Assembly (NCBI GenBank): GCA_965285935.1
Contig: OZ260667.1
Coordinates: 28,954,001 to 29,018,000, forward strand
Direction of reading: 5' to 3'
DNA: 64,000 nt
Origin: Ophelia neglecta
Taxonomy: Eukaryota
In this document: in pieces, positions 1 through 54,600 of the stretch
Layout of the letters: each line of letters begins with the position of its first letter
Numbering within the stretch: position 1 is the stretch's first letter
Notes under the pieces: generated by a model
What the model was told of the DNA's origin: nothing
Seen by the model: the letters and a program-made list of their open reading frames with translations, nothing else
Databases searched by the model: none
Program-made: the position numbers and the translations under genes

Positions 1-82
1 GGCGGAAGTCGGCCGGAGCACTGATAGTGGCCCGGGACAACCGACAAGGCAAAAAGACGGCGCGAAAACTGGCTCGAGCAAA

Positions 83-11582: not shown

Positions 11583-11980
11583 GGCTCCTCCGGGCGGCCA
11601 TTCACCGGAAAACTCCCCCAGGCAGCTCCTCCCGTTGGCTCCTACGGGCGGTTCCTCCGGAATAGTTCAGCCGGAGGCTCTTCCTCCCGGCGTTACTTCC
11701 CGGCGGCTCCTCCGGGAGGCTCCTCCAGGAGATTTCGGATCCTCAGGGCGCCTCATCCCGGCGGGTCCTCCCGGAGACTCTCTCAGGCGGTTCCTCCGGG
11801 AGGGTCGCCCCGACGGCACTTCCCGGCCGGCCCTTCAAGAGACTCCCCCAGGTGCTTCCATTGGTAAGGTCCTCCCGGAAGTGTCCTCTCGAAGGTTTCT
11901 CCAGCCAGCTCCTCCAGGAAGATTCTCTTGGCGTCTCCTCCAGCTATACTGTTGATTCCTCCAGTCGCCACCTCCAGCCA
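11583..11980. repeat. Degenerate GC-rich minisatellite, ~13-bp unit GGCTCCTCCGGGA, roughly 30 copies, in gene A intron 1
   Basis: For example ggctcctccggga ggctcctccagga at ~11705-11730 and gcctcatcccggc gggtcctcccgga gactctctcaggc ggttcctccggga at ~11750-11800. Confidence 0.8.
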
Positions 11981-14187
11981 ACCCCTTTGCAAATAATTTG
12001 CTAATGCTTCAATTTTGTTGTAATTAAACTCTTCCGACAATAATATACATTTATTTTCTTACCAAATATTGTTTGGGTACTCACAAACATCGGTGCATAT
12101 TTGTAGGTCGATTTGTCATGGATGACATTTCAATTTGTTTTAACAGTAAATTCGATATTTCCAGCCATAAAATATAGCTGTAAGCTCATGACGCCAGTCC
12201 GCTCGCATCATTGCAGTGGCCAAGGGACTTCGTAATCTCGGAAGGATCCACACGGGTGATCCACCATTTTCGAAAGAAGTGGGTCAGTTATTATTGTGAG
12301 GTGGTACTATGAGAGTTCCTTACCATAGAGGGTGGGACTGGTATTCTCTAAGGAGCAATGAACAATGTGAAAAATGAAAAAGAGGATTTCTTGATCCCTG
12401 GAACTCCCCGCCTTAATCCGTCACAGAACCATTAATGTGTGCATGCAATGCAGAAGGAAAGATCGTCTGTGAGTATGAGCCAGTTGCCGACTTCTATTTC
12501 CCATTTATTTATCCTTCCCAAGCGCCATGTCCCGTCTAAAACTTATTTTATTGTCTTATTTGCCCACTTTTGGTTGAATTACTGCCTACAACTGAGCTTT
12601 TTGCTACATTTCTGACTCCGAAAATTGCTATATATACTGCACTGGGCCGGTTTTTATGCCCCTGACGCCTCTGAATAATCTCGATCAGAGGGGGAATAGC
12701 CGGAGGTGTCTACACAAGACAAATGAGGAGCGTAGATACGGTCCGTCACTGTCAGAATACTGAATAGAACCAAATTACGGCCCTTTAAAACAACCTTTAA
12801 AGCTGGCGATATACTTAAGTAAGATATTCTGGGAATCTGTGGGAAATGGCTTTTATGTCTCTCTTCTGAGCCAGAAGAACAGCAGGGTACCCACATGGGT
12901 GTTTAATAGGTGTCCGACATATTTATAAGGAGTGTTGGAGATTATTATATATATCATTTTTAGGATATGTCACTAATATGCATGCGATTAGAATTCTAGG
13001 TGCGTAACAGATGCGTTCGTTAATATTTCTCGATCATAAAATGTGAAATATTGAAAGCAAGTAGCTTACAGCCATTTTATCCTTTTAGTATGCCTAATAA
13101 ACAGGCTTTACTTATAAGGAATCGGATTGCATGGGCCTATTATTAACTAATCTGTGCTCAAAGCCCAGCGAATTGTAGCCACTTGTCAATTGTAGGGGCT
13201 GAGAGAATATTTCCTTACATATGCAGGCCAACGCATCCGGAAACCTTCCATCACTTCAGCAACAATGGCGTTCCAGATTGAGCTCCTGGCTTTTATTTCA
13301 GACAATAAACGTTATCTCTAATAGAATAACAGCAGACAAGGAGGATCTACAAGATGGTCTGGGTGGTTACAGTACATTACTAGGGAGACAATATACACGC
13401 CGCTACTACATAATCTGATTTGCTTTGTGCGAATGCAGAGCTCATTCACAAACAATATCCTGTCCACTCGCGGTGATCTACGGGAAATAGCCGCTCCCTG
13501 ATCTAATAGAACATACAACACAGAACCGAAACTCACTTGAGTTTTTCATTCTCAGAGAGAACACAGATGGATGCTTGAATCATTCTCCTGAAACCCTCAT
13601 ACTACATACATTGAGTCACATTGACCATGCATATCCTTCCAGCTAAAATAGAGTTCTGTATAAAACCAGACTGGCTGCCAGGAGAGAAAATACCCCTTAT
13701 TGCATAAATTTGTAATTAAGACCATCCTCCAATTCTGGAAGACACCGCCAACTCATAAAAAAGGGTCTGAGCAAACAAGAGCTTTGAATATCTATTAGAC
13801 TGTGTTGTACTAAAAACGACATCGAGTAGAACGGCATTTAGAAATGTTCTAGAACACTACATGTGTCTGCTTGTGAACGCTTGGTGGTGAATGTGATGAG
13901 CGCCCGAGACAGGGTCCCTGGGACCCGCCAGTTGTTTATGACGACTCCGAGGCGAGGATGGTCGTCTGCCTGAGCCCTCGCTGCATGGAAGCTGACTGGA
14001 ATTCCGTATACACACCCAAACCTTTGTCAGCAACAAGTCCTTTACCAAGATTTCCGGTAAGCTGGGTAAGACGATTTACTGCCGGGGGTTTGATTAACCC
14101 ACTGAATTGCTATAGAAAGCTTAATACCATAGTGTAATACCAGCGCTACACCACCCAATACCCGTACACGACGTGAGCAGGGCTGCC

Positions 14188-25900: not shown

Positions 25901-27087
25901 TTGTCGGTTTCACACCCCAGTAGAAGGTGCCCGGGGGGAGCGCAGTCGAATCATTACCAGCCCCTCACCAGGCTACAGATCAATGCCTCAAACGATGGTG
26001 AGAAGTTGGCTGTTTACATGGCAAGCATTCATTTGAAGGCAGTAGTAACACTTGAAAGAATCGCTTCTCGAATGGCTGCCAGCCAGAATAAGTCATAATG
26101 AGTATGTATAGATCTACTGTTGATGAGCATTATATACTGGACGCCTGCAGTATATGAACTAAGACTATCTCAGCGTCTCATTCGCTAAAATTCGCAGTTC
26201 GCCTTACAATAGATGGCCTATTATGCCAACCACAAAGCTGGCAAATTGGACCTTTTCAATGCTTACTATTTCATATTCATTTATTTGGGTGGTAAGGTTA
26301 TTGCTGAGAAATGAAAGCTGTAATTTGGTGTTATGTTTCTCACCCAGCAGCTCCTGTGTCTGCTGGGTCGGCTGATCCTGTTTAACCTCGTCAATCGATG
26401 CTTGTCCTGACGGCTCGTCTGAGATAATAGGCCGTCTAAAGCCCCACTTCACTCCGTGACCCGACCATCTCCCACGGCTCACTACACACCCACCACAATC
26501 AGCTCATAACCTGCTCGCCGCTCAACTTCCATGAATTTTGACCAGTTTCTTTCCCCTTGTGATTTGCGGAGGCAGCAAGGAGTGATGCTGGCCGAAATCA
26601 GGTTATTCGACAGTGTAGAGCCTAAATAAGAATCCCGCTGTCAGACCATATCCTCTAACAGCCCTGTTAGTGGAATGGCGTTGGTATTTGATGAATCCAC
26701 AGGTCAAACGCATGCCAGAGAGACTGTGTTTGCCGCTACACGACTTTGGTGCGTAAAAACACGAAGCCCAAGCCAAATTCCATAGCAATTTGGAACATAA
26801 CCATTATTTTGAATAACTAGAGCCTTGACCCTATTAGTTTTTCATACTTGATAATCGTTTACAGAAGAAAAGAACATGCAAAAGTAAAGTTGGTCCTGAT
26901 TATACTGGTCTTGACCGCCGGGCTTAATAACCAACTATTTCATTTAAAGGAGCCATTTAATGGGGTCTCGACCCCCTCCCACTATTTGTTCTTCTTTCTG
27001 CAAATGGCTCCAGGGTGTCATGAAAGTTGAAATGGGAAGTAGTGTCTCTTCCAACAAGTATTTGCACCATCCATGTGACAACAGATT

Positions 27088-27198
27088 CCCCCCCCCCCAC
27101 CCCGGACCCATCTCCCCCCCCCCACCACCACCACCCCCACCCTACCCCGCACCCACAACACCTCGACCCGACCCACCTACTCTCCCCCCCCCCCCCCC
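27088..27198. repeat. C-rich low-complexity tract (G-quadruplex-capable on the minus strand)
   Basis: Several C runs of 5-15 nt and CCA repeats within 110 bp. Confidence 0.7.
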
Positions 27199-30100
27199 TC
27201 ATCCCATATCCCTCACCAACTCGGTAAATCCTATAGCTCCGGCAGGGTAACCCTAAACATCAGTTCCATTAGACATTGATTATAATTCCATGTCGACTTT
27301 ATCACGACCTACTGCCTTTTCATTTGCTATTTGTTTTGTCACCAATTCATCATATCACTGTCCTCACAGACCTCGGTAATTGCATCACTAACTGCCGAAT
27401 TCGTCATAAAATCCACGAAATCTCCAATATTGGTTTTGATTATTGCTGGCGTTGGTGCCAATGGAGGGATCACCCAGTTTCTCCATATAGAGGCACGGTT
27501 TTGCGGCATATCGAGGGTTTTTCCATAAAGATTTTAATGACTACAAGCATCCATTAGAATAAACCAATCAATAGATATTATGCTCGAATGGAAATTCAGC
27601 CTCATGCAATAATTACCCTTCGTCGCTCAAGCCATGTGCTTATTCACATAAACTAACAGTCATTCATTTGTTTGAAGGGATCAACATCACAATCTAGGCG
27701 CAATAATCTGCCCTGAAAAGTCCATGTAACAGTTGGCTCAATGTTAAATCTTGGATCATTGGAAAATTTAATAAATGCCTTGTCAAAGCAGCTCATGGAA
27801 CTACGATATGAACGGGGATTCCCATTGAGATCAAAAAGTATCTCATCAAGCATGTTTCTGATAATTTTTTTTTCATAGATCTGGGACTATCTATACATCG
27901 TTCTTGTAGCTGATCTTGCCCAAACAGACCTGATACACTTTTTGCTGCCTTTACATGAGGAGGATCTTGTAGTGTGTTTTACTTTAGTTCGACAAGTATA
28001 ATAATTATTTATCTAATATAAGAATGCTTTTCTTCTGTAGTCATAATATAAATATTTTATTTATGTGGGATGCACCTTCGGTAGGTTCCACTACTGTACT
28101 GTAAAAGCTCCATATGAATATGAATATTTATAATATCATGCACTTGATTATTACAATTATCAATTCTGCAATAATTTAGAAATAATATATATTCATTTAT
28201 TTCATCACTTCTAAAGCGCTCGTTTATGGATACCTAAGCGGAAATCCGTGTCGTGATCTGTTACTGGAGAATCCTCGGGACTCGGGTACCAATAAATGCT
28301 TTATTTATGAAACGTAATATTTAGTACTGCATGGCATGAATCAGTAAACGTATTAACATGATTAAGCTGCTCATGTCGGAATAATGTCCCCGTTTGTAAG
28401 AAGGAAAACGACACCCTGCCTCCCCCGGCCTACTGATTGTCATACAAGCTCTCCTGGTCATAAATAAGAAACATTCATCATGTCACAAGCTGGAAAGAGC
28501 ACAAGAAGGCCCATCAACGTATTAACTTTATTTTCGTTACAACCACCATCCCCACCCACACCCCACAACATTGCTACTCCCTTCTCCCTCCTCTACCTCA
28601 AGCCCTCACTCAATGAGTCATACCTTTGAACCCTGTTTGACATCCCTTCCGTCTCCTCTCCTTTTTGTTGCGCCTGTTATGGGAAATTTTTAGGACAATT
28701 ACATTACTTTAAAAGACGACAAGCAGCTTGGCCTACAAAACAAACTGACTTCTTCAAAGCCATACGATTTAATGGAATCATTCTCAAGGGTGTATAAATA
28801 TGGTGCCTATATTACATTTAGTTGAGCCTCCCACCCAAACGCCCTCGCTCCCCCCTTCCTTGTCAGTCACCCCATCCCATAAAACTAAACTCTTTAACGG
28901 CTTTAAGCCGCCCACCCACAATTATAACACTAATGCATCATAAGCAGAAGAGTGCTGTTTGTATTGCACAGGTGGGAAAAGAATTACACCTTAAGGAAAA
29001 TTCTGCGTCGTTCAAACTGAACATGGATTATTTATGCCAGTGTCTATCGAGTCGTTCAGTCATTCTGGCTAATTACGTTTCGAAGAAACTGTTAACGCCT
29101 TGACTGTTCCACCTACAGTGCGAAGCAATTAAAAAAATCTTGTTCGCCTTTCATCTGGTAGGCGTGGCCTTGATTTGAAGGACTAAAGAATTCTTTGTCT
29201 GTACAAGTCCCCTTTCCATTTATAATTAAACCGTTTATAATATTTAACCTTACCAACATTTTTGATTGAGTTTAATAAGCTAACGGACTAAACATTCATA
29301 GACGTTCAGTTTTAGTGTTTGTTTCTTTCTATTTGATTACACCATATATTCACTTAGTTATTAATAACATGTTATTATAATTTATAAGTCTTTATTTAAG
29401 GTCAAACCTATTTGTACCCCCTTTACACTAGCCTAATGTTATTAGGCCAAGATAATTATACCCAGGCATGGATGTTCAGTGTAAGACACTTAAGGAGTCA
29501 TTTATCAGTAGAGATATCCGTCGCGTAGCTTCCCCTGGCCGAGATTAGCAGCCTTGATATTTTAATTGTAACTCGATTTAAGTTTTCCTTTTTGTTCGAA
29601 TAGTTTTTTTTTTAGTTTATCCTTGCTTCTAAGAATAGGTGTGTAGGGAAAGAAAACATGTATACATGTCTGTGTGATCCGCTTAGTTATAATTATAGCA
29701 TAAACTTACTACTTTTAATAATTAAATTTTTAAATAACTTTACTGATTTGAACTTAAGTGATTCACTATCAAATGCTTGTATGAAAGTATTTTCATTGGT
29801 AACTGCATTGAATAAATTAAAATGATCGTACCCGACCTCAAAGTCGATTAAAATTAATTATAGCTTAGAATCCGAAAATATATGATTATAAAGTTGTAGC
29901 GTCTAGGTTCAACAAATTGGGTGAAAATAAAATAGGCATACGAATGTCATTTAAAAGGCTTCAATCGTCACCTTGCAATTTGTTTACTTTTTCTGTTTCG
30001 AGAAAAAAAAAGACCTCGTGTATTTGGTGGAAAAATAAAAGCGGATACACGGCAGACAATATAAAATCAATCGTCAGGAAGTCATTCTGTCTGAAGTCAC

Positions 30101-34325: not shown

Positions 34326-35394
34326 GTATGTATCTGCTAGTTTCTGATAAATGATGTGTGTTATATTAGTGTTCTTAAATCAGAATCGTGGCTGTCATAG
34401 GGCATCTCAGACGCGTAGATTGAAGCTAGTGCGCGAGATCACCATCAAATAAATAGGCCGCAAACTCAATGTTATATATGTTTATAAAATTAATAGAAAA
34501 AGTAAAGCCTGTATATATAGTTCAGATCTCAATTTACATTGAGTAGGCATATAAAACCGGAAGGAAGCACTGATATGTCAACCCGACAACATAAAGCAAC
34601 TTAATCTTAACAAGCCGTACGTTATTGTGCGTTGATAGATCATTTAAATAGCTCACTGCAGCAGAGAATGTTCATCAAATCCAGATTGACAGTTCAATCT
34701 CAGTTAAACAGTGAAATTCATTCACAGATGCGAACATAAATTCTAGGCTGTGCAATCCAGACGTCATTTTTATGGGGACTATACGCTGCCAAGCACAAAA
34801 GTAAAAATATCTATATGAATGACAACAATTCTCTTAGAGCAATTTTGATTTTTCTATTAATGGTTCTCATGTGCTGCTGTTGAGTATATAGTCAATCTAT
34901 TGAATCTGTATTGTTTGTTGCTCACCTCCAACCACTCAACAATCGAAAATAAGAGTGGCTTTATGTGAATAACTACAGTAGTGATGTTGTAACAGACCAG
35001 AAATAGCATTGGGGTAATAGAATTTATATTTATGATTGATTGTTACTTTAAAATCTCCTGTTTTAACTCGTGATGTAAAGAAATGTGAAGTCGGGACATC
35101 TTGATATTTTGAACGCAAGTTTTTTCGAAAACAAGGTTAATCTTTATACCGATTATATTTAAAGGAAAGCATATAATATGTAAGGGGCCTTACATATGAC
35201 AGAAATATAGGTATAATATAGTGTTCGTGACCCTCTTAGTTTGGAAAATACAAGACAATATTGGTACTAGCTGCTTAAATATTGCCGATAAAATAGTAAC
35301 ACTCATTACATGTCCTGTGTCTGTGCATTGGTAAAGTAGATTTAGGTCCATTTTTGTGCTAGCTAATACCATTTAATCATTTCTGCTATTTCAG

Positions 35395-35972
35395 TCTTAG
35401 CAACACCTTCCCCAGAGTACAAAGTTATTCCTATAGATGAAATGGACGATAATGATTACGAAGAGAGACAGACAAAAGTGGAAACAAATGACGATTTGAT
35501 ACCTTTAAATAGACACGATTATGATGGTCAGCCATATCCCGAACTCCCCGGAAGTGAACGCGATACCGATTTTGTTGACCAGGATTGGAGACCAGTGAAC
35601 TCTCGTGAGGATGACGACAGTGACATTGTCAGTCGTAAAAATGGCGGATATGGATACAGTGAGGTGAATAAAAACAAAAAGGATAATGAAAAAGATAGAA
35701 CTCAAGACAGACCACCTAAACAGCGACCAAAAGGTAACGTCTCTCTCGGGTACGTAACTGTGACATCCACAACCGTTGATCCGTTTGATTTAATCCCTCC
35801 AAAAAACGCCATAATAGACGAATTTGGAGTAAGAGAAACCGAATATATTCATAACTACAAAGTAGACAACGTGAGGCATCATAAAAAGAAACAAGAAGGA
35901 AGGAAACTTCGCGGGAAGTTACGGGAATCCAGAACGAGACTTCATAGGCAAAGGCCATCTTCCAGCACGTGA
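35395..35972 (+). CDS. Gene A terminal coding exon: acidic then basic low-complexity ectodomain, (F)LATPSPEYKVIPIDEMDDNDYEER...RLHRQRPSSST*
   Basis: Acceptor catttctgctatttcag| at 35394/35395 is phase 1 and in frame with ORF 35442..35972 (176 aa, D/E/K/R-rich). TGA at 35970-35972 is followed by a long AT-rich UTR-like region. Linkage to exon 1 is inferred from phase only. Confidence 0.8.
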
Positions 35973-38395: not shown

Positions 38396-39720
38396 GTTTA
38401 TTGCGCCTTTAACGGGTGTTAACTACCATCTACATGCTTAATTTTTTAAGTAAATAACTAGGAAACAAGCGGCTTGTATACTGGCATGAGAAATAACTGG
38501 TGCTAAATATGTACGTTATGCCCACATTTTTTTCAGTTGTTTTTTAATATAGAAATGATAGAAAGAAAAATAATTCTTCGAAGTCCTAGTTCGATGCTGT
38601 TTTAACATGAAACAGATGCACATGACCCCTATCCCTTGCCCTAGATTAAGCGGGACAAATCTTGCAAAGCTTGTTATGTGTTACAATGTAGGTGTTAAAA
38701 CGATGGTTAAGTTAAACATTCATAGTTTCATTGACATTCTTACAGTATCACAAACTTATTTGTGAACTATGTTAATGTCATGAATAATTTAAAGCATTTT
38801 TATTGGTTAAATCATAATTTTACTTATGAACATATGATGATTTCACATGACAATGTTAACGTGGATTTTCACTTTATCGGCAAGCCAACCGTTTCCAGCT
38901 AGAAAACCTTTTTATTTGAGTTCGGATATTTATGTTTCTTGTTGCAATATATGACGATCTTTACTGACACATATATGTTCATTGTCGTCTTGCCATATCT
39001 TTCATTGGAGAAATCCTTTATTAAGTTACTACTTAATCATCTGTTAATGTCAAACCTTACGATGAAGTAGTCACATTCTCTAACAAACCTGTCGTAAAAT
39101 CTAAGATGGAACACAACCGTACCTGTAAACGTATATTAGCCATTTGCTCTGGGATTCAAGAGCAATTTAAATAATATAAATGTTACTAGGAGAAAAGTAA
39201 AATCTATATATAAGGGACAGACAGTGAACTTTTATTTTACGCAAGGCGGGAAAACGTGGCAAAACATGGCCCATGCAAATTGGAGTAGAAACCAATTTAG
39301 CTCGTTGTAAAGGTAATTGATCTATATTTTGCCCCAATATCAAGGACATATGGATATATGGATGTTTATTGATTTTAAGTGGGAGGCATCTTTTAACTAC
39401 CACTGGTGTAAAAAGTAGTTTCCTCATCAAATATTCTTTATATTTTTATTATTGACAGGAATATTTTCTGAAACAGGTGGTTGCTTTGCCGGGAGGCAAT
39501 ATTAGATTTATAATCAAGTGAGAGCCCATTGGTTTTAATCTAGTGCACAAGGTCCAATATTGAAACTAGTGACATTGTTTTATTTTGGTTTTATGTAACA
39601 TTAATCAGTTTTATCTAACATTCTGTTATAGATTAGCAGTGTGTCACATCTATATCATTAAAGTTTAAAAGGCGTGTTGCCCTTAAAGAACAAACAAGTT
39701 AAAAATCAATTTTGCATATA

Positions 39721-39881
39721 TTACTGCGACTGGTCTGTGATACATAAACAAGAGCTGGCGAGTCCCTCTTCGTCGTAGGGCTGGTACGTGGAATTGAAGC
39801 ACGTCAAATTGTCTTCTTGCAAGAGGGGAACTGCGACAGCTGTCAAAGTCTCTGTAATAACCTCGAGGTCCTCCTGTGTAC
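39721..39881 (-). CDS. Gene B terminal exon: (G)TQEDLEVITETLTAVAVPLLQEDNLTCFNSTYQPYDEEGLASSCLCITDQSQ*
   Basis: Acceptor ttttgtgtgatttttag| in phase 1 gives 52 open codons then TAA at 39723-39721. Minus-strand AATAAA at 39584-39579. Acidic composition continues that of exon 2. Confidence 0.85.
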
Positions 39882-40390
39882 CTAAAAATCACACAAAAGG
39901 GTAGTAAAGCCTATTTATACTGAGATTAAGCTAGTAGTTAAAGCATATCGCACTTATGTCATCTATTGAAACTTCAGTGTGCAACACAAACTCATTGAAT
40001 TTATTAAAGAGAACACTCAGTTTAACACCTGTTGGTCATGATTGTATGAGTAAAGTGTTGAAAGTCTGTACAGAGTGATAACTAAATAACCTTGTAAGCT
40101 AATACAAGGAAATAGCATTTAACTTGTTGATTTTGGATGCTATCTTTAAATCTAAATTCCCTACAGTGGTGCGAGTAAACGTTGCAGTCCAACCGATTTA
40201 AAATACACATATTCTTCCAAAAGAACAAATTAAAAAACAAATGTTTAAACTATTTATGATAAAACTACCCTGATTCGTCTCTAATTTGTTGTTTTAAAAA
40301 TTCCATGTGGCAATATAATGGCCGGGTAATAAATACATGTAATCATATATTGCGGGCAGTCTAAAAGAACAAAATTCTACTCAGACCTAC

Positions 40391-43220
40391 CGCTGAGGAT
40401 TGCATTGTTTTCTACCTCCTGATGTAGATCGGTATTCTGCCATTTCACCACCTCTAGAACTCTCATACACACGGCCTCTTCGGGGGCCGGTGTCGCGTCC
40501 TCTAAGGGGTATCTAAGGAAATTCAGCTTTTGGAACATGACAAATTTTAATGATTCGATTTCTGCAGAGCTCAGGTTTCCAAAGATCGATTCGACAAACT
40601 GCCGAGGTATGCAAGCCCAGAAATCAAGAACTGTGTACTCGGTGACGTTTTTGTTCATTCGTCTAAGCATCGCATCAGAACCACTGTTAAGATAGATATC
40701 GGCGTAATCTATTTCTTTTCCTTCGTCCTTATAAGACAAGGCAGTTGCATCATCGTCATTGAAGACGTCTCCACCCAGTGCTCCGAGTATGTTGGCCAAT
40801 GGGTTTGGTTTTCCTCCTCCATCGCTGCCCCCGCCGCCACCAAGTGCTCCGAGTATGCTGGCCAATGGGTTTGGTTTTCCTCCTCCATCACCACCTCCGC
40901 CGCCACCCAGTGCTCCGAGTATGCTGGCCAATGGGTTTGGTTTTCCTCCTCCATCGCCGCCTCCGCCGCCACCAAGTGCTCCGAGTATGCTGGCCAATGG
41001 GTTTGGTTTCCCTCCTCCACCACCACCTCCGCCGCCACCCAGTGCTCCGAGTATGCTGGCCAATGGGTTTGGTTTTCCTTCTCCATCGCCGCCTCCGCCG
41101 CCATCAAGTGCTCCGAGTATGCTGGCCAATGGGTTTGGTTTTCCTCCTCCATCGCCGCCTCCGCCGCCAACCAGTGCTCCGAGTATGCTGGCCAATGGGT
41201 TTGGTTTTCCTCCTCCATCACCACCTCCGCCGCCACCCAGTGCTCCGAGTATGCTGGCCAATGGGTTTGGTTTTCCTCCTCCATCGCCGCCTCCGCCGCC
41301 ACCCAGTGCTCCGAGTATGCTGGCCAATGGGTTTGGTTTTCCTTCTCCATCGCCGCCTCCGCCGCCATCAAGTGCTCCCAGTATGCTGGCCAAAGGGTTT
41401 GGTTTTCCTCCTCCATCGCCGCCTCCGCCGCCACCCAGTGCTCCGAGTATGCTGGCCAATGGGTTTGGTTTTCCTCCTCCATCGCCGCCTCCGCCGCCAC
41501 CAAGTGCTCCGAGTATGCTGGCCAATGGGTTTGGTTTCCCTCCTGCATTACCACCTCCGCCGCCATCAAGTGCTCCGAGTATGCTGGCCAATGGGTTTGG
41601 TTTTCCTCCACCATCACCACCTCCGCCGCCACCCAGTGCTCCGAGTATGCTGGCCAATGGGTCTGGTTTTCCTCCTGCATCGCCGCCTCCGCCGCCACCA
41701 AGTGCTCCGAGTATGCTGGCCAATGGGTTTGGTTTTCCTCCTCCATCGCCGCCTCCGCCGCCACCAAGTGCTCCGAGTATGCTGGCCAATGGGTTTGGTT
41801 TCCCTCCTGCATTACCACCTCCGCCGCCATCAAGTGCTCCGAGTATGCTGGCCAATGGGTTTGGTTTTCCTCCACCATCACCACCTCCGCCGGCACCCAG
41901 TGCTCCGAGTATGCTGGCCAATGGGTTTGGTTTCCCTCCTGCACCACCACCTCCGCCGCCATCAAGTGCTCCGAGTATGCTGGCCAATGGGTTTGGTTTT
42001 CCTCCACCATCACCACCTCCGGCGCCACCCAGTGCTCCGAGTATGCTGGCCAATGGGTCTGGTTTTCCTCCTGCATCGCCGCCTCCGCCGCCACCAAGTG
42101 CTCCGAGTATGCTGGCCAATGGGTTTGGTTTCCCTCCTGCACCACCACCTCCGCTGCCGTCAAGTGCTCCGAGTATGCTGGCCAATGGGTTTGGTTTTCC
42201 TCCTCCATCGCCGCCTCCGCCGCCACCAAGTGCTCCGAGTATGCTGGCCAATGGGTTTGGTTTCCCTCCTGCACCACCACCTCCGCCGCCATCAAGTGCT
42301 CCGAGTATGCTGGCCAATGGGTTTGGTTTTCCTCCACCATCACCACCTCCGCCGCCACCCAGTGCTCCGAGTATGCTGGCCAATGGGTCTGGTTTTCCTC
42401 CTGCATCGCCGCCTCCGCCGCCACCCAGTGCTCCGAGTATGTTGGCCAATGGGTTTGGTTTTCCTCCTCCATCGCCGCCTGCGCCGCCACCCAGTGCTCC
42501 GAGTATGCTGGCCAATGGGTTTGGTTTCCCTCCTGCACCACCACCTCCGCTGCCGTCAAGTGCTCCGAGTATGCTGGCCAATGGGTTTGGTTTTCCTGCT
42601 CCATCGCCGCCTCCGCCGCCACCAAGTGCTCCGAGTATGCTGGCCAATGAGTTTGGTTTTCCTCCACCATCACCACCTCCGCCGCCACCCAGTGCTCCGA
42701 GTATGCTGGCCAATGGGTTTGGTTTTCCTCCTGCACCACCACCTCCGCCGCCACCCAGTGCTCCGAGTATGCTGGCCAATGGGTTTGGTTTTCCTCCTCC
42801 ATCGCCGCCTCCGCCGCCACCAAGTGCTCCGAGTATGCTGGCCAATGGGTTTGGTTTTCCTCCTGCACCACCACCTCCGCCGCCACCCAGTGCTCCGAGT
42901 ATGCTGGCCAATGGGTTTGGTTTTCCTCCTCCATCGCCGCCTCCACCCCCATCCAGTGCTCCGAGTATGCTGGCCAATGGGTTTGGTTCTACTTCTGCCT
43001 CACCGCTTCCTCCATCGCCGCCTCCGCCGCCACCCAGGTCCCCGAGAATACTGGCCAATGGGTTTGGTTCCTTCTCACTGCTGTCGCCGTCACTTCTCGA
43101 TGCATTCTGTAAACCGGGGAGAGGGTTGTCTTCAAGATTACTATTATGTTCATTATTCCCAGGTTTCACTTGTTCGGGTGGATTCTCATTAACCTCAGTA
43201 TTGTTTAGCACAGGCCATGA
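40391..43220 (-). CDS. Gene B exon 2 (2830 nt): short acidic N-terminus, 35 x 22-aa Gly-rich repeat, first part of the C-terminal domain
   Basis: Acceptor tttttgtttaattattatag|TCA TGG CCT. Corresponds to ORF 40377..43211. Donor AGC G|GTAGGT at 40391, phase 1. The frame stays open ~125 codons beyond the repeat, and many unit variants are synonymous in this frame (CTG/CTT, GGC/GGT, GGA/GGG). Confidence 0.92.
40770..43070 (-). repeat. Coding minisatellite, 66-bp unit, 35 copies (first copy divergent, last truncated)
   Basis: Plus-strand unit approximately AGTGCTCCGAGTATGCTGGCCAATGGGTTTGGTTTTCCTCCTCCATCGCCGCCTCCGCCGCCACCC. 35 P(N/D)(P/S)LA(S/N)ILG motifs counted in the translation. Confidence 0.97.
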
Positions 43221-43386
43221 CTATAATAATTAAACAAAAACAACAAATAGTGAACATGTTCTATTTATATTGTAGTCGTTGTTTTACATCTTGTGAATTC
43301 AATAGTAGTCGTAGCTAATTTTCTTATTATTCAATAACAATGCTCAATGTCCAAAAGAAAAATACCAGGAAAATAAATTGACTCAC

Positions 43387-43461
43387 CGATGATTCCTTAA
43401 CAAAGCATAGAACCAATCCGATTAGTATTGTGGTTAAAAGTGGGGCCTTTTTCTGACGCAT
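43387..43461 (-). CDS. Gene B coding exon 1: signal peptide MRQKKAPLLTTILIGLVLCFVKESS
   Basis: ATG at 43461. Basic n-region, hydrophobic h-region and polar c-region. Donor TCG|GTGAGT, 75 nt, phase 0, matching the phase-0 acceptor at 43220. Too short for the ORF track. Confidence 0.9.
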
Positions 43462-45428
43462 ATTGTTGCTATGTAAAGCTAATTATGTTAAAACCCATCA
43501 GCACTTAGAACTAGTAGGAATGAAGAAGAGACTTATACTGGGTATAAACACGAAACATAATTCAAGAACCATTTTGGTGCACATTCGCAAACTTTCTTAG
43601 AATATGTTCAGACTATCGTGTGATTCGATTGGTGGTCTAAGTAGACCTGTATATCTTGGTGAGTTTTCTTCATGTCCACAATCGATGTCATTGAATTATA
43701 TTTTTCCAATTACCGTAATTGCTGGTATTGAATTTCACTATCTTGGAAATTGATGCTTTTGAAATTGATCCCCCCCCCCCCAATGGCTTACAGAAGGGCA
43801 ATGCATACATAGATTTTTTTGTGTGTGTAGACAGATAATGCTCTAGCAAGTCGATAATTTGACGAATGTTATGACTAGAACTAAATTCATTCGTCCTAAA
43901 TGGAATGCGTACTACACATTTAATATTCAAGATGAAAAAGTAGTATGCATGCTGCTTTTGAATAAATGTGCACCGAAAATAAAGCTAAACTAATAAATGC
44001 GACGGTAGTAAATGCTCTTTTCTCAGGCCAATGAAATGTGTGAGGAATGGATTGAAAACTTTCCCATGGAATGGGTTTTGTCGTAATTATTATACCAACA
44101 TTCATTAGATTATTTTATATCAAAATTGTACATTGTTGCCATTACGCCAGTCTGGGTTTTCAGAGGTCATCCTGCCTTCCGAAGATATCAACCACATGCT
44201 TCCTTTTTCTCAAAAGAAAAACTTCTTTGAGATGTTTGTCTTCTTCTCATATCTTATGATTTCTGGGTGGGTTTGGTGAGGAGATGGGGGGGGGGGTGCT
44301 CCTAGAAGTTAAGAAGTCATGTCTATGCTCCGTAAGGGGACTGGGATAAATATACTCCTTTACTTGAAACGCTTTCCGATATTCTGGTGTGAGGAAACTA
44401 TGTAAGCTATTCTCTCACTGAATTTTGCCATGAAGACCATATTAAGCTAGCTTGAATCAAACTTCTCCCTCTTACCAAAAGTTTTAATTTTAACCGTCAT
44501 CTCTTCAACAATATAAATGAGCTATTTTTTTTTTAGAATACTGTTGAGATAACCAATGAGTCTCTTGCCAACTTGGCCTGCTTATGAATACATCAGCGCC
44601 ATCCTATCAGCCTTTCTCGCATAAAAAAAATCAAGTTATCCCGTACTGGTAACACTATAGTACCTAATAAATAGGCCTAATGATATTTAATATTTGTACA
44701 TTTAAAATGTCGTCGGCCAAACTTGCCACACAACGCAGACTGTACATGCTTATATCTTCTAAGAGTTTGAAAAGTACTTCATAATTCGAATATATGATGG
44801 TTTGTTATAATTCAATTTATTTTAAAATTAACAAATGACTTAGAAGTCGGACTGACTTAAACACAGGTACATGTATAAGACTAGGAGTTATAAACTATAA
44901 ACGGCAATGTCATTGCTCCTTACAACACTCAAGTTCACGAATTTCATCACTTCAATTTTATTTAAATGCCAATTGTTGTAATAGACGGATGTGATGCTTA
45001 TTTCAAGTAACATGCCTATGTACATTTAATAAATAACTGGTCAAACATTAATTATAAAAGAACTTCGACGGTATAATACAGCAATGAAATACGATATAAT
45101 GTACATAGTTATTCTATTTACATATTAGAGTCAATTTATATATTTTACCATATCAATTTACTAAGTAACATATTCACAATGCTCGTGCACCTATATAACA
45201 CCAATACAGTTTGAGCACTTTACATAATATAATAGTTTTAATCCTCATCGAGGCTGCCTGCATTGTTTTCCCATGTGAGGTTGCTCTGAAGAGCGTTCAT
45301 TCCAAATTGAATCTTTCAACTTCGTGGCTGGAGAACACTTGTCACACGATGGGATTTTCTGCAGGGCACATGACTTTCTTCTCAGAACTACTATTCGAAA
45401 TATTTGAGCAGCATTTCGATGTGTGCTT

Positions 45429-45547: not shown

Positions 45548-45733
45548 CTGTAAATAGAAAGTGCGGAAAGTTCGTAAGGAAATTGGAAATCAATAAAATA
45601 TGCTTTAGTTGTAACAATACTATATACATGAATATTTAACTGAAACTCCCTCACTTGTATAATGAAATAGTGTTCCGTAACATTGAACTTATTTCCTGGA
45701 AAAGGTATAAGTGGTGAGTATAAGCCCACTTAC

Positions 45734-45966
45734 TGTTTACATATGGAGGTGGTCCTTTCACCGTGGGATCGTGTATGAATCTAAAGCTTATCCAAGAGGG
45801 CGACGGAGTAGCTATTTTTTCATTTGCTGAAAAGTACTTGACTATGGCCGTCGGGCTGAGTGAGTTGTAGATAAATGTATTGCTCCTCTTTGTTAGTTTG
45901 TCAGCACATATCTTCTCAATTTGTTTCTCGCCGTCAAAGATCTCAATGTATTCCAAACATAGAGGG
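45734..45966 (-). CDS. Gene C: CUB3 C-half PLCLEYIEIFDGEKQIEKICA... plus Pro-rich stalk
   Basis: Acceptor tttatatttttcag| and donor AACA|GTAAGT. 233 nt, phase 2 to 1. Matches ORF 45651..45956. Confidence 0.88.
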
Positions 45967-46511
45967 CTGAAAAATATAAACTTGAGAAATGCTTAATAGG
46001 TCTTCATTATTCTTGCTGCGACTTTTGACCAATTTGATAAAACCAGGCTGGCTTCCTTAATTGTTCACTATATAAAATGCCCGTCTTGCGCTGTGAGTTA
46101 CGAACACTTCGGAGCAAACACAGTACTTACATAAGGGCTACGTGATTAAAAAGCGTTAAACCCGGTATTCCTGAACTACTTATGAGCCGAGGATGTCGAA
46201 GGAGGTTACCAGCATGTGATTTTTATTGGGCTCACCAATTTTCTGGCTTGTCTAATTTTCCATAGGCCTTTTTGCCTTATTCAACGTCCAATACTAAGGC
46301 TTATACATGTATCTCAAATACTCAGTGTTCAACCTGATTAATTTTACATCACGTTGGCTGAATATTATCTTTGGAAAAATTCAATACATGTAGTAAAGAC
46401 AAGCATAGCGACCGTACCACAGCAGTCACTGCCACTGCCATGCTTCTTTTGTGTTGTTCTACATGTGAAGAACTTTACCAACCTAAACCACTTGTCTAAA
46501 GAAAAACTTAC

Positions 46512-46713
46512 TCCAGTTCAGTGACCACAACCTCCAGTTCAATCTTTTCATTATATTTTCCTTCAAATCTGTATTCACAGCTGGTTTCGTTCTTTATCCG
46601 ATGATCGGGCGTGTGAACGTCGCCTTCCTTTTCGTCCATTTCGTCCAATTTCGCTGACGTAATTGTCCAATCACATAAAGTGTCAGCTGCCAGGTCACCA
46701 CCATCGTACTCGT
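46512..46713 (-). CDS. Gene C: CUB3 N-half ...TLCDWTITS...GDVHTPDH...TSCEYRFEGKYNEKIELEV
   Basis: Acceptor ggtttttag| and donor GGA|GTAAGT. 202 nt, phase 1 to 2, open. CUB Cys1/Cys2 pattern present. Confidence 0.88.
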
Positions 46714-46888
46714 CTAAAAACCGTACTTGTCTATTTCAAATAATATTATGGGTGACCATACTTCAATCTTGATGAAGGAATGATCATGTAAAGCTACACA
46801 TGTCATGTTACTACTTAATTCCGAGAAAAAAGTGCTACACAATTTACGTTACCCTCATTGCACGTAAAGTAATGGTAAACTCACGTAC

Positions 46889-47088
46889 TTCTCCACCGGG
46901 ATGTCGCCTGCAGATCAAATCCACTGTAATCCCAGGGGGGTCCCCCGGGTCCGGACTCGAAGATCAGTAGTAAGGAGGAGCCGCTGGATACTAGGTGGGC
47001 GCCGTCCAGGCCGCAGAAACGACCAATCAGGGGACTGAGGGTGGACATCCCGTCATAGACTGCTACGTAATCCTCACTACAGTTGGTG
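46889..47088 (-). CDS. Gene C: CUB2 C-half TNCSEDYVAVYDGMSTLSPLIGRFCG...SSGSSLLLIFES...SGFDL
   Basis: Classic CUB CxxDYVxVYDG...GRFCG...GF pattern (ORF 46881..47099). Acceptor ttggccaaaag|. In-frame donor AGAA|GTACGT, 200 nt, phase 2 to 1. Confidence 0.92.
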
Positions 47089-47191
47089 CTTTTGGCCAAA
47101 TAAAGTGAAATTGATGCATTTAATACAATATGGACAAGAGACCTGCCCTTATGAATAAGGCTACGTTGAGGGATAACACAAGAATTAGTAC

Positions 47192-47375
47192 CTTCTCTTT
47201 AAATCAAATTTTCCTGTAAATCCTTTCCCTCCCATTCTCAATTCCACGCGGTCATCGTCAAGATTAGTCAGCAAGTAGCGACATTTAGTGTTTGGTGGGT
47301 AAATACCCGGATATCCGGGCGACTGGACATCGCACCACCCTAAGCAGGTGTCGATGGGTATGAGCCAGTCACATT
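47192..47375 (-). CDS. Gene C: CUB2 N-half (E)CDWLIPIDTCLGWCDVQSPGYPGIYPPNTKCRYLL...
   Basis: Acceptor gttcttcaacag| and donor AAG|GTACTA. 184 nt, phase 1 to 2. Hallmark CUB motif SPGYPxxYPPNxxCxY. Confidence 0.92.
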
Positions 47376-51056: not shown

Positions 51057-51486
51057 CTAGAAAGTTCAGAGAAAGTTTATATTCACGAAGAAAAGAACGA
51101 GAAACTCAATAGCCTTGGTCTAAATATGCATTATTATTATTATTATTTCACACGACCACGTAGAGCTATAGATTAATCGAATGGCCACCCCGTCTTACCA
51201 ACGAGTTAAAAGAATAATATGAATTTTAGTGTTGTATCCAAGCCAATCTGATAGCAATACGCCCTGATTTTTATTCGTTTGTTTGTGTGTTAGCACAAAC
51301 ATGAACACATATACCAGACGTATAGTCTCAGAGAAGTCGCCCCCTCCCCTCCCCCCCCCCCCCCCCTACCCCTACCCTCATAACATAGTGTAATTAGGCA
51401 GCAGGTAAACCACTAATTAAAAGTGGTGTAAGAAGTAATGCGGCTTTACGAATCATAAGTATGTACATGAAAATCGGTGTACGCAC

Positions 51487-51688
51487 ACTTGTGTTTTGGC
51501 GTCATACATGCCAGCGCGGATATTTCTTACATCCACCTGAATGAACTGTCCTGGTGCCGCCACAAACCGGAACCAGCAGTAAAGGGCCTTGCCTCGATCT
51601 GATTTCCGCACGTTGTCCATTTTTAAGGTCAATGTAGCCTTTTCCATGTCATTGAGATCCCCCACAAGAACGGTCTCATTGCATTTAT
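51487..51688 (-). CDS. Gene C (CUB-domain, putative GPI-anchored protein): CUB1 N-half, first exon found; gene is 5'-incomplete
   Basis: Acceptor ttctatttttag|, reads KCNETVLVG...ALYCWFRFVAAPGQFIQVDVRNIRAG, typical of a CUB first half. Donor GT|GTGCGT, phase 1 to 2. Confidence 0.85.
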
Positions 51689-54600
51689 CTAAAAATAGAA
51701 ATACACATACTGTATTTATCAACAAGCGATAAATTTCATAATTAAATAAAATATACATGACCTTCAATGTGCATAGCTACTTAAAGATGAATGACTTTGT
51801 AACATATGAATAAAGTTTAGTGTTATAGTTTATTATCTGGAGCAGCTGGCCTTATCACTCTAGCGGGGCAACTGTTGCTATGTTTATTTATATACAGACC
51901 ATATATATAAATTTTTAATGCATCCTATTTACAGCCACCTGCCATCCCAGTTTGCCAGTCACATCTAAGTACCGGGCCGAAATGTTTGCAGACAAGCTTT
52001 GAAATATTTATGCGATCTTATTCAAATACACTTAGGGAGACAAGAATAAAACAGTCGTATGAATGTGTCCTTTTTAAAAGACGTCGTGTTTGGGGGGACC
52101 AATTGGAAGCTAAAGGAATGGTGGACTTTTCATATGACTAGCTTTGGAAATAATAGAAACGCTCTGAGATCATCCGGTTGACAGAATCCATGAACAGAAA
52201 TTGTCTGAAATGTCAGTTATGTCTGTTGTGAATCGAGAGACGGGATCTCATGGATAGATGAGGGAAAACGCTCAATAATCGAAAAGGAAAGATGCATGTG
52301 CCTTCTCTTTAAAAGCTTAAACCAGACAGTATATATAGTTTCATAGCTTCTATCGTTTGCTTCAGATTCCGTGGCCCAACAAAGTTTTATTGAAACTTGC
52401 CTTAGAATATTTAAAGGCAAAAGCCCAGATTCAGTAGGGCTATGAGCCGCCATAACGTTGCTCCACAGTTAGAGTGATGCCTTATTGTTACGATCTTCTT
52501 TGGTCGTTTTGTGGAGATTTTTACTGTAGAACTGCATCGATTCCTTTTAATGCATGATCCTCTGTTAACGGGCAAAGTGACGCCTGTCTAAAATATAGAT
52601 TACAAGCGGCACATGTATGGCCTGTCGCCGCAGCCCAATGGATGTTTCTGTGCTGGATACAAAGAAGGCGCTGATCCATCGAATAAATAATTTGATGGGG
52701 ATTTCGCCCAGGCTCACTAGCAACGGTTCTGTCGTCCAAGGGCAATGGGTCGGGCTTAAAGTATTTATTAGTGGGCATATGCTAATCAACTTTGACCTCA
52801 TAACCTACATTTACCATCAAATGTAGGTTCCGAAAGAGACAGAGGCGATGGCAAACTAACTGGGAATCAATGAATTTCAAAGTCGAATGAAGGACACAGT
52901 GGCCAAACAGCTCTAAATATTCTCCAGCACTAATTTAAAATTGAAAGTGCATCAAACCAAAATCCTGACCATCGATAACTAACTTTATTTATCAAAAACC
53001 TAATATTAAAATATAGACGGAGCTGTTCGTAAAATGTACCGAACAAACTGAAACATGATGGTTCGAGTATTTGATTACATTAATTCGCCCGGTATTGGAA
53101 TAAGACATGTTTACACACGTTTTAGGACCTACATTTGATAAATAATGTATCACTAAATCATTTGTATGAATATATATATACATGTATATGTAGTATCTAG
53201 CTGAGGAATTAACATCATAACTTAAACATCTTGTGGCATTTTGTTTCATGGACAGTTGAAATAATAATTTACATTAGTGTATATGGATTTGACGATTTTG
53301 CGATGTTACGATATTTACTAATAAAACATTTGGAGACCCGTTACATAAGTCTAAATTTTCTTAATAAGAATGTAATAGAGAAAGAAAGTATTGGGAATGT
53401 TTTTATAATTATCATTATACTTGTGTGTAAAACGTGAAACTGCACTTGAACAAATCGAAGCAGCACATCACACACTGCTCTAGAGGCCGCTCCAACACTA
53501 CAGTACCCTGGGCGATTTAATGGGAGCTGACAATATCCGGGGGCTTATATAATTTCCTAGGAAATCTGTAGAGAGGATTGAAACTTACATGCATCAAGCT
53601 ATTGAATTAACTCTCTCTACCTATAGCAAAAATCGGCAATCGCGACCCACTTCGACAAATGGTTAACTGCATTATATATGGGCCTTTGTAAATTGCATTA
53701 ACACAAATTGATTATTTTCCCGTCATGCCACCCGTGGCCATATTTTCGATATTTTATAAATGAGATGCACGGCGTCAGGACTTTGCCATGTTTGTAGAAA
53801 ATACATGGCGGGAGAGAGCCCGCAATAGCTTGTCACCTTGTCCTCGAAATGAGAGAAGTGCCGATATGAATCAACCCAATATGTGTGATGAAGGGGAAAG
53901 GCCTGGGCTGGCGGCGGGCGGGAGGGGGTGGGGTGGGGGGTCACCACGCAAAGAATTTGTAAGGGATTGTTCAGATATAAAGCTTCTTTCTGTCTATTTC
54001 ATTAGATGTACCTGTGAGAGTAGACCTAAGGTGTACCTCTTACGACCAAGAGGTGGCTTGACATTCTGTAACATGATTGAATGAATTATGCATGATTTTA
54101 ATACAACTATGTTGCATTTGACGTAATGATAATAGTGATTACATAACAACACACACGACATTTTAAATGAGATTGAGTGATAACCCATTGGGTGTGAATT
54201 AAGTGTCCTTCCTGGTTACTGTTAACTGTCCGACATAACATTATATTGTGTCTTAAAATTATGTTGGCATGTCCAGGGGAAAACACACAAAGAAGGTGCA
54301 TGCGGCGGGATGCATCACTTTATGAATATGATCTTTGGTATATGAAAGTGTGTCATGGACTAAATGGAGAGAATTATGGTGTAAAAAACATTATCTCAGC
54401 TTTCAGAATAAATATATTTAAGAATAATTATTATTTCATTATTAGGAGGTAGGCTAATTATTGGACAAAATGCGGCTCTTTAAAACAAGTGGTTCAATGC
54501 TTGCCTAAAACAGTAGTGGGCTATTGTAGTAAACGTTCTTGTCAAGCCATGTAAAGAAGTTCGAAATTATTTTCCAAGGTATTTCTGTGAAAACGTCACA

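What the first reader, a model, noticed from the sequence alone, without database searches (positions are those of the whole stretch)
39721..43461. Secreted 1021-aa block-copolymer protein: signal peptide, 35 x (amphipathic motif + polyglycine spacer), folded C-terminal domain; candidate new structural or adhesive biomaterial protein
Seen: three phase-compatible exons give a signal peptide, ~50 polar/acidic residues, 35 units of KPNPLASILGAL-GGGGGGDGGG and a non-repetitive tail. The repeat has no Tyr, Cys or Gly-X-Y periodicity, so it is not a DOPA-type adhesive or a collagen. It is about charge-neutral (1 Lys and ~1 Asp per unit). Established: signal + Gly-rich repetitive core in one giant exon + small terminal domain is the layout of spidroins/fibroins and other secreted elastomeric or fibrous proteins. 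Inference: NP-capped LASILGAL segments form short amphipathic helices acting as hydrophobic stickers on flexible Gly tethers. That would suit a gel, mucus, cocoon, tube or egg-capsule material, or multivalent membrane binding. I do not recognise the repeat from any named family.
Basis: partly seen in the sequence, partly recalled or inferred. Interest (0 to 1): 0.85.

Follow-up and report, generated by a model that had tools for sequence, protein, structure and literature searches.

The report
Orphan secreted glycine-rich repeat protein
A single-copy, three-exon gene in an unnamed invertebrate genome very probably encodes a 1021-residue secreted protein built of 35 copies of a short hydrophobic motif separated by polyglycine; it has no detectable relatives and no expression data, so a gel or fibre material role is plausible but untested.

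Summary
A 66-bp x 33.6 tandem array (40771-42988) lies in one 947-codon open frame on the minus strand and gives 35 units of [K/E]PNPLASILGAL plus a ten-residue Gly-rich spacer. Canonical, phase-compatible splice sites join it to a 25-codon signal-peptide exon and a 53-codon last exon, 1021 aa in all. GC steps, open-frame odds and a codon score favour this frame in all four exon segments. I put the gene being real at about 0.85.

Single-sequence AlphaFold2 gives 9-10-residue helices on PLASILGALG and low-confidence spacers, with weak confidence overall. The motif is plainly hydrophobic with a small-residue face, not strongly amphipathic. The 'folded C-terminal domain' is unproven: pLDDT is 49.7, there is no Pfam, PDB or 1.84-billion-protein relative, and 5 of 7 haplotype SNPs are non-synonymous. 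A self-association model gave no verdict. The only public runs are DNA, so splicing and expression are untested. There is no paralog in the genome.

My best reading is a lineage-restricted secreted sticker-and-spacer matrix protein. The rivals are a peptide polyprotein, a surface coat and a functionless young ORF. It is a new variant of a common kind, of moderate interest. The scan had noted only this same stretch before.

The parts
43387..43461 (-). Exon 1: ATG plus 25 codons. It looks like a signal peptide, with a basic n-region MRQKK and a 16-residue hydrophobic core.
   Evidence: Read. The donor GTGAGT follows at 43386. This frame has the best codon score of the six. A is at -3 of the ATG. 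No SignalP-type tool was available.
43221..43386 (-). Intron 1 (166 nt, GT..AG, pyrimidine-rich 3' end).
   Evidence: GC is 0.26-0.30, against 0.45-0.59 in the adjoining part of exon 2.
43071..43220 (-). Start of exon 2: 50 polar, acidic residues (N 20%; S, P and E 12% each) with two N-glycosylation sequons.
   Evidence: No paralog in the genome. This frame is open and scores best of the six.
40776..43070 (-). Repeat core: 35 units of a 12-residue motif ([K/E]PNPLASILGAL) plus a Gly-rich spacer of about ten residues.
   Evidence: TRF array 40771-42988. Unit table. The motif is nearly invariant and the spacer is variable. AlphaFold2 puts helices on PLASILGALG.
40391..40775 (-). End of exon 2: a non-repetitive acidic segment of about 129 residues. 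It has 2 Cys, 2 sequons and the protein's only dibasic site (RR).
   Evidence: The frame is open at chance odds of about 0.001. The codon score has z = 4.4 against window background. No Pfam, PDB or library relative. The model is low-confidence and mostly helical.
39882..40390 (-). Intron 2 (509 nt, GTAGGT..AG, phase 1).
   Evidence: GC is 0.23-0.34. It carries 7 SNPs and 2 indels between haplotypes.
39721..39881 (-). Exon 3: 52 codons plus the split Gly codon and the TAA stop. It holds 3 Cys and 2 sequons and has no hydrophobic tail.
   Evidence: GC peaks at 0.46-0.50 between AT-rich flanks. No paralog. No variant in the three runs.
39579..39584 (-). AATAAA, a candidate polyadenylation signal about 140 nt after the stop.
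   Evidence: Pattern positions. This is inference only.
43532..43537 (-). TATAAG, a possible TATA box 71-76 nt upstream of the ATG.
   Evidence: Read. This is inference only.

Best explanation
This is a real, single-copy, lineage-restricted gene for a secreted, N-glycosylated, acidic protein of 1021 residues. The core has 35 units. Each unit has a Pro-capped hydrophobic segment of 8-10 residues (PLASILGAL) that tends to form a short helix with a small-residue face. Each unit also has one Lys and a flexible spacer of about ten residues, mostly Gly with one Asp.

The inferred mechanism is as follows. Outside the cell the polyglycine spacers stay disordered and hydrated. The 35 hydrophobic motifs act as weak, reversible, multivalent contacts within and between chains. 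That gives a coacervate, gel or elastomer-like matrix for mucus, tube, cuticle or egg coat. The five Cys of the C-terminal region (an odd number) could link chains by disulfides, and the single Lys per unit could serve as a covalent cross-link site.

What is shown: the array, the open frame, the splice logic, single-copy status and the lack of relatives. What is inferred: secretion, helices, self-association, cross-linking and the tissue role.

My odds are 0.85 that the gene is real, 0.75 that the product is secreted, and about 0.45 that it has a matrix or material role.
For: Gene and frame:
- The array and the 947-codon frame are confirmed.
- Exon 2 has no Met before the repeats. Its frame opens exactly at an AG acceptor, and the upstream ATG exon has a canonical donor in compatible phase.
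- The third exon and a polyadenylation signal fit the model.
- GC rises at each predicted exon.
- The chance of the open flanks is about 0.001, 0.06 and 0.05.

Secretion and properties:
- There are six N-X-S/T sequons in about 230 non-repeat residues, and no C-terminal hydrophobic tail.
- Gly runs are written with mixed GGN codons, not one slipped triplet.
- The motif is almost invariant while the spacers vary.
- AlphaFold2 places six helices at 22-residue spacing with low-confidence spacers and no global fold.
- Composition is G 35%, L 13%, A 10%, P 8%, with net negative charge.
- The gene is single-copy.
Against: - There is no RNA evidence. The three public runs cover the introns without joints.
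- No ortholog or paralog is known, so there is no conservation test.
- In the C-terminal coding part, 5 of 7 haplotype SNPs are non-synonymous, including W>R and A>P. SNP density there is no lower than in the intron.
- Variation within the array fits the antisense Pro-rich frame as well (dN/dS 0.32 against 0.305).
- Synonymous sites in the motif are also nearly invariant. The invariance may therefore reflect recent unit copying rather than protein-level selection.
- Structure models are low-confidence.
- The self-association job gave no verdict.
Confidence: 0.45

Rival explanations
1. It is a polyprotein precursor. The secreted chain would be cut into about 33-35 copies of one small peptide, a signal, pheromone or Gly/Leu-rich antimicrobial peptide. 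One possible product is a roughly 20-residue peptide released after the single Lys and amidated on a spacer Gly. Another is a peptide trimmed at the X-Pro-X-Pro start (KPNP) by a dipeptidyl peptidase.
For: - There is a signal peptide exon.
- The 12-residue motif is invariant while the spacers vary, as in multi-copy peptide precursors.
- An X-P-X-P N-terminus and a Gly before the Lys are typical of processed peptides (my own knowledge, untested).
Against: - Each unit has only one basic residue, and it is followed by Pro. From general knowledge, prohormone convertases do not normally cut that bond.
- Units 1-2 have Glu in place of the Lys.
- The only dibasic site (RR) lies in the tail, not between copies.
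- There is no acidic or dibasic frame around the motif.
Confidence: 0.1
2. It is a soluble, surface-active or multivalent coating protein rather than a bulk material. Many weak hydrophobic motifs on flexible tethers would let it coat hydrophobic surfaces, lipids or microbes, for example as a lubricant, an antifouling or wetting layer, or an agglutinin.
For: The architecture evidence is the same as for the best explanation. The net acidic charge and the sequons favour solubility.
Against: - The helices are too short and too weakly amphipathic to insert into a membrane on their own (moment 0.33-0.37, no cationic face).
- No lectin or other binding domain was found.
Confidence: 0.15
3. There is no working protein. 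A minisatellite would have expanded inside a young or decaying open frame that is not expressed, or is expressed without a selected function.
For: - No homolog was found anywhere searched.
- No RNA run holds the locus.
- Haplotype variation in the tail looks close to neutral, with 5 non-synonymous and 2 synonymous changes.
- Synonymous codon choice does not differ from background.
Against: - Three separately open segments with canonical, phase-matched splice sites are hard to get by chance, as are an ATG plus signal peptide, exon-like GC and a polyadenylation signal.
- There are no indels in the coding parts, while three lie in the non-coding parts of the laid stretch.
- The 2.2-kb array keeps its frame without a single indel.
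Confidence: 0.15
4. The coding strand is the plus strand. The array would then encode a proline-rich repeat (SAPSMLANGFGF plus a Pro run).
For: That frame is open over 40735-43230. It shows the same low dN/dS among units, 0.305.
Against: - The frame closes 12 codons before the array.
- It has no upstream ATG or signal exon.
- Plus-strand frames hold 4-7 stops across the 387-nt C-terminal flank and score below the minus frame in every segment.
- An open antisense frame sharing third positions with the sense frame is expected over a real gene.
Confidence: 0.03

Closest known systems
Spidroins and silk fibroins
   Same: A signal peptide, one very large Gly-rich repetitive exon and short non-repetitive ends, in a secreted product.
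   Different: There is no match to the silk terminal-domain families or to any Pfam model. There are no poly-Ala, GA or GPGXX blocks. The hydrophobic block is helix-prone rather than beta-prone.
Squid suckerins (block-copolymer structural proteins; comparison from my own knowledge)
   Same: Secreted, with strict alternation of a short structured module bordered by Pro and a Gly-rich amorphous module.
   Different: Suckerin modules are rich in Ala, His, Thr and Gly-Tyr and form beta-sheets. Here the repeat has no His or Tyr, and helices are predicted.
Elastomeric proteins: abductin, elastin, resilin (comparison from my own knowledge)
   Same: Very high Gly content with interspersed hydrophobic residues and few charged residues. 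A Lys next to Pro recalls the KP-type cross-link regions of tropoelastin.
   Different: There is no sequence relation. The repeat is 22 residues long with a pure poly-Gly run. Cross-linking is not shown.
Sticker-and-spacer phase-separating proteins, such as FG nucleoporins and keratin/loricrin 'glycine loops' (comparison from my own knowledge)
   Same: Short hydrophobic contacts spaced regularly along a disordered, Gly-rich chain. This is the mechanism I propose.
   Different: Those proteins are intracellular and use aromatic stickers. This one has a signal peptide and uses aliphatic Leu/Ile stickers.
Multi-copy peptide precursors, such as FMRFamide-type neuropeptide or apidaecin-type antimicrobial precursors (comparison from my own knowledge)
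   Same: A signal peptide and many identical copies of a short motif between more variable spacers.
   Different: No dibasic or otherwise recognisable cleavage sites flank the copies.

Membership tests
Spidroin / silk fibroin | Conserved non-repetitive N- and C-terminal silk domains | tested here: not met
   Pfam scan of exon 2, the tail, exon 3 and exon 1 found no family. The only hit was a sub-threshold DUF5576 match at E 0.18.
Spidroin / silk fibroin | Poly-Ala or (GA)n blocks alternating with GGX or GPGXX | tested here: not met
   The unit table shows none.
Collagen | Gly-X-Y triplet periodicity | tested here: not met
   The spacers are runs of consecutive Gly, and the motif has Gly at one position only.
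DOPA-type adhesive proteins | Tyr-rich (DOPA precursor) and Lys-rich repeats | tested here: not met
   There is no Tyr in any of the 35 units.
Classical multi-copy neuropeptide or antimicrobial peptide precursor | Each copy flanked by mono- or dibasic convertase sites | tested here: not met
   There is one Lys per unit, followed by Pro. It is replaced by Glu in units 1-2. The only dibasic pair is RR at exon-2 residue 853, in the tail.
Classical multi-copy neuropeptide or antimicrobial peptide precursor | Signal peptide, with the peptide conserved while the spacers drift | tested here: met
   Exon 1 was read. Minor-allele sums are 22 in the motif, of which 15 fall at one silent site, against 85 in the spacer.
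Mucins | Pro/Thr/Ser-rich O-glycosylated repeats | tested here: not met
   Exon 2 has 5.5% Ser, and Thr is absent from all 35 repeat units.
Exchangeable apolipoproteins (Pro-punctuated 22-mer repeats) | Amphipathic helix spanning each 22-mer, and a match to the apolipoprotein family model | tested here: not met
   No Pfam match. Predicted helices cover only 9-10 of the 22 residues. The shared period of 22 is taken as coincidence.
Elastin-like cross-linked elastomers | Lys-derived covalent cross-links | not testable with these tools
   This needs protein chemistry on the native material.

The most novel reading that the evidence does not exclude
This would be a previously undescribed class of extracellular sticker-and-spacer material. 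Short aliphatic small-xxx-small helices on pure polyglycine tethers would give a reversible, hydrated gel or elastomer without aromatic, DOPA, His-metal or beta-sheet chemistry. If so, it is a new design principle for protein biomaterials.
Probability: 0.2. Interest if true: 0.65.

Novelty: new variant of a known kind. Interest (0 to 1): 0.38.

Why it matters
Secreted low-complexity repeat proteins form the mucus, tubes, cements, cuticles and egg coats of invertebrates, and several have inspired new materials. This one uses an unusual chemistry. It has aliphatic, helix-prone motifs on pure polyglycine, with about one Lys and one Asp per unit and no Tyr, His or Cys in the repeat. If it is abundant in a secretion, it would add a simple 22-residue building block that can be made recombinantly.

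As it stands it is a well-supported gene model for an orphan protein. There is no evidence on expression, processing or function, and such orphan repeat genes are common in these genomes.

Tried and rejected
- **Relatives of the tail.** The word-based search and the exhaustive HMMER search of 1.84 billion representatives gave only one spurious hit, a bacterial repeat protein at 24% identity. A whole exon-2 search found nothing. A PDB sequence search found nothing below E = 2.
- **Atlas feature search.** It returned unrelated unnamed clusters at a below-par recognition score.
- **A look-alike on the same chromosome.** The region near 62.38 Mb is a G-rich satellite field. Its frames are broken by stops and it has several periods, so it is not a paralog.
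- **Back-translated motif scan of metagenome contigs.** It gave 21 loci, 20 with a single match. The one locus with two matches was read, and it encodes nothing like the repeat.
- **Paper search for the motif.** No paper holds it. A general literature search gave nothing closer.
- **RNA evidence.** The run search found only three runs of one sample. Their contigs cover introns and intergenic DNA without joints, so they are DNA.
- **Self-association.** The job with 4 copies of 3 units returned no verdict, so it is not evidence either way.
- **Choosing the strand from variation among units.** This failed, because the sense and one antisense frame score alike.
- **Fold searches.** I did not run them, because both models are low-confidence.
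- **Naming the organism.**
  - There was no mollusc hemocyanin hit, but that search had no working control.
  - The second Atlas call, with a COX1 piece, gave no useful taxa.
  - The mitochondrial contig gives only a lead.
- So there was no search, fold or exact look-up with the joined 1021-aa product, and no fold of the tail across the exon 2/3 junction.
- **Rejected readings.** The collagen, silk, mucin, DOPA-adhesive and apolipoprotein readings are rejected in the membership table.
Full report
**The array and its frame**

Tandem Repeats Finder reports one array at 40771-42988, with period 66, 33.6 copies, 91% matches and no indels. Five of the six frames are open across most of it.

Cutting that frame at each ILG gives 35 units. 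The first spacing is 27 residues and all the others are exactly 22. Units 1-2 begin with E. Units 3-34 are K-P-N-P-L-A-S-I-L-G-A-L followed by ten residues that are mostly Gly with one Asp. Unit 35 runs into the non-repetitive tail. The repeat has no Tyr, Cys or Gly-X-Y pattern, and carries one Lys and about 1.1 acidic residues per unit.

**Gene model**

Exon 2 has no Met before the repeats. Its frame opens exactly at an acceptor (pyrimidine-rich tract, AG at 43222-43221). An ATG at 43461, 166 nt upstream, starts 25 codons that end at the donor GTGAGT, in phase 0. Those codons are MRQKK, then a 16-residue hydrophobic stretch, then KESS.

At the other end, the donor GTAGGT at 40390 splits a Gly codon. 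An acceptor at 39882 restores the frame for 52 more codons up to TAA at 39723-39721. An AATAAA lies about 140 nt further on. The three exon lengths sum to 3066 nt, which is 1021 residues.

Three results support this model:
- GC content rises from 0.23-0.34 in the predicted introns and flanks to 0.38-0.53 in the non-repeat coding parts, and to about 0.6 in the array.
- Random stretches of this window are open over 129, 53 and 50 codons in about 0.001, 0.05 and 0.06 of trials.
- I trained a codon-frequency score on six long HSP70-family frames of the same genome, against the window's non-coding trinucleotides. The tail lies 4.4 SD above random window stretches.

That score mostly reflects amino-acid usage and the absence of stops. 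A purely synonymous score does not separate the frames.

Every search was made exon by exon, by reference.

**What variation says**

Among the 32 regular units there are 20 DNA types, and neighbouring units are never identical. So the array is not a very recent burst.

This gives dN/dS of 0.32. The antisense Pro-rich frame, which shares those third positions, gives 0.305, so this test cannot choose the strand.

The 36 nt that encode the motif are almost invariant. They carry 22 minor alleles, 15 of them at one silent Leu site. The 30-nt spacer carries 85. Silent sites in the motif are quiet too. The pattern may therefore reflect how units were copied as much as selection on the peptide.

**Public reads**

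Their contigs cover introns and intergenic DNA, at word depths of roughly 4-39 per contig, and show no joints. They are DNA, so splicing and expression remain untested.

The haplotypes do show:
- 7 SNPs in the 389 coding bases of the tail;
- 7 SNPs plus 2 indels in the 509-nt intron;
- no variant in exon 3;
- one further indel in the downstream non-coding stretch, so all three indels lie in non-coding sequence.

Of the 7 coding SNPs, 2 are silent and 5 change the residue: V>I, R>Q, K>R, W>R and A>P. The numbers are small, but there is no sign of strong constraint on the tail.

**Relatives**

None was found.
- Pfam gives nothing for any exon.
- The tail finds nothing real in 1.84 billion representative proteins, in the word-indexed collection or in PDB sequences.
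- Whole exon 2 finds nothing.
- In its own 762-Mb genome, the tail, exon 3 and the N-terminal segment each match only themselves.
- A weak repeat match 33 Mb away is a G-rich satellite field with broken frames.
- A back-translated motif scan of metagenome contigs gave 20 loci with a single match each. The one locus with two matches was read, and it encodes nothing like the repeat.
- No paper holds the motif.

These libraries did not even return this protein itself, so they do not hold this species' proteome. They may also be thin for its close relatives. 'Orphan' here means no relative among the proteomes searched.

**Structure**

Single-sequence AlphaFold2 on six units gives six helices of 9-10 residues, exactly on P-L-A-S-I-L-G-A-L-G. 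Their pLDDT is 50-70, the spacers fall below 50, and pTM is 0.18. That agrees with helices on flexible tethers, but it is weak evidence.

The motif is hydrophobic, with a mean of 0.69-0.76 and a moment of 0.33-0.37. Its other face consists of small residues (A, S, G, A) in a small-xxx-small pattern, not polar ones. 'Amphipathic' therefore overstates it.

The 129-residue part of the tail encoded in exon 2 is modelled as mostly helical at mean pLDDT 49.7. That is too poor for a fold search. A four-chain self-association job returned no verdict.

**Protein properties**

- Exon 2 is 35% Gly, 13% Leu, 10% Ala and 8% Pro.
- It has 76 acidic residues against 47 basic ones.
- There are six N-X-S/T sequons in about 230 non-repeat residues.
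- There are five Cys, two in exon 2 and three in exon 3.
- There is one RR site, in the tail.
- There is no C-terminal hydrophobic tail, so no GPI or membrane anchor is expected.

**Interpretation**

Most likely this is a lineage-restricted secreted glycoprotein that works as a sticker-and-spacer polymer. Hydrated polyglycine tethers would carry 35 weak hydrophobic contacts. The single Lys per unit and the odd number of Cys are possible cross-link points. Together these features would suit a gel, a coacervate or an elastic matrix. The mechanism is inferred from the sequence alone.

There are four rivals:
- **Peptide polyprotein.** It is attractive because the motif is invariant and starts X-P-X-P. 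But no cleavage sites flank the copies, and K-P is a poor convertase site.
- **Soluble surface coat.** The same architecture could serve as a coating rather than a bulk material.
- **Functionless young ORF.** The tail's near-neutral polymorphism and the lack of any relative fit this.
- **Plus-strand Pro-rich reading.** This is unlikely.

**Context**

- CUB-domain exons lie upstream on the same strand, at 46884-47198 (Pfam E 7e-8), with CUB-like frames at 45654-45992 and 51456-51776. Polyadenylation signals lie between them and this gene, so I take them to be a separate gene.
- No Rfam family matches in the window.
- The genome's mitochondrial contig uses TGA for Trp and has trnK(UUU) and trnS(UCU). 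It carries the blocks cox3-Q-nad6-cob-W and nad3-S1-nad2. PMC2667193 lists these among the conserved annelid clusters. Here, though, genes lie on both strands, whereas that paper describes all genes on one strand in the annelids it studied. An annelid or other lophotrochozoan host is a lead, not a finding.
- Other first-stage notes list several more secreted low-complexity repeat genes in this genome. I did not test them.

**Verdict**

The biomaterial reading is reasonable but untested, and the 'folded C-terminal domain' is unproven. This is a new variant of a common kind, the invertebrate secreted repeat protein. I score its interest as moderate rather than the 0.85 first given.

Noticed in passing
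window 45654-47198 and 51456-51776, minus strand: The upstream neighbour on the same strand has CUB-domain exons. The frame at 46884-47198 matches Pfam CUB at E 7e-8. Two more frames look CUB-like by eye but fall below threshold.
   Followed up: partly
L012 (G000:C12:62378000-62387999): This is a dense field of G-rich satellites with periods of 62, 57, 82, 138, 162 and 466 bp. One 82-bp unit translates to RPSPVSLLSALGEG plus a Gly/Glu run, which superficially resembles the repeat studied here. Its frames are broken by stops, so I take the likeness as low-complexity chance.
   Followed up: partly
G000:C223 (L014, L015), 17755 bp: The mitochondrial genome has genes on both strands. ARAGORN called 21 tRNAs, including a second trnM-like gene with anticodon UAU. 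The blocks cox3-Q-nad6-cob-W and nad3-S1-nad2 look annelid-like. About 2 kb (8000-10200) is presumably rRNA.
   Followed up: partly
window 40327-40474: Run X3 carries a divergent haplotype with five SNPs and a 7-bp deletion in intron 2. A low-depth contig also leaves the reference at 40427 into an A-rich sequence, which may be an insertion allele or another locus.
   Followed up: no
window 35367-35969, plus strand: A 201-codon open frame rich in Asp, Glu, Lys and Arg has an internal ATG (176 aa). It has no Pfam match and may be a single-exon gene or one exon of a low-complexity protein.
   Followed up: partly
window 2-418, plus strand: An open frame has an ATG, a polar head of about 85 residues and then a hydrophobic stretch of about 20 residues. 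It looks like the first exon of a type II membrane protein. It has no Pfam match.
   Followed up: partly
window 11544-12001 (plus strand) and 26948-27259 (both strands): These are low-complexity stretches open in several frames. The first is Pro/Gly/Ser/Arg-rich and the second Pro- or Gly-rich. A strong negative GC skew runs over 26-30 kb.
   Followed up: no
G000, 48 matches on contigs C1, C2, C5, C7 and C12: The HSP70 family is expanded, with several intronless copies and a cluster on C2 near 104.69-105.03 Mb.
   Followed up: no
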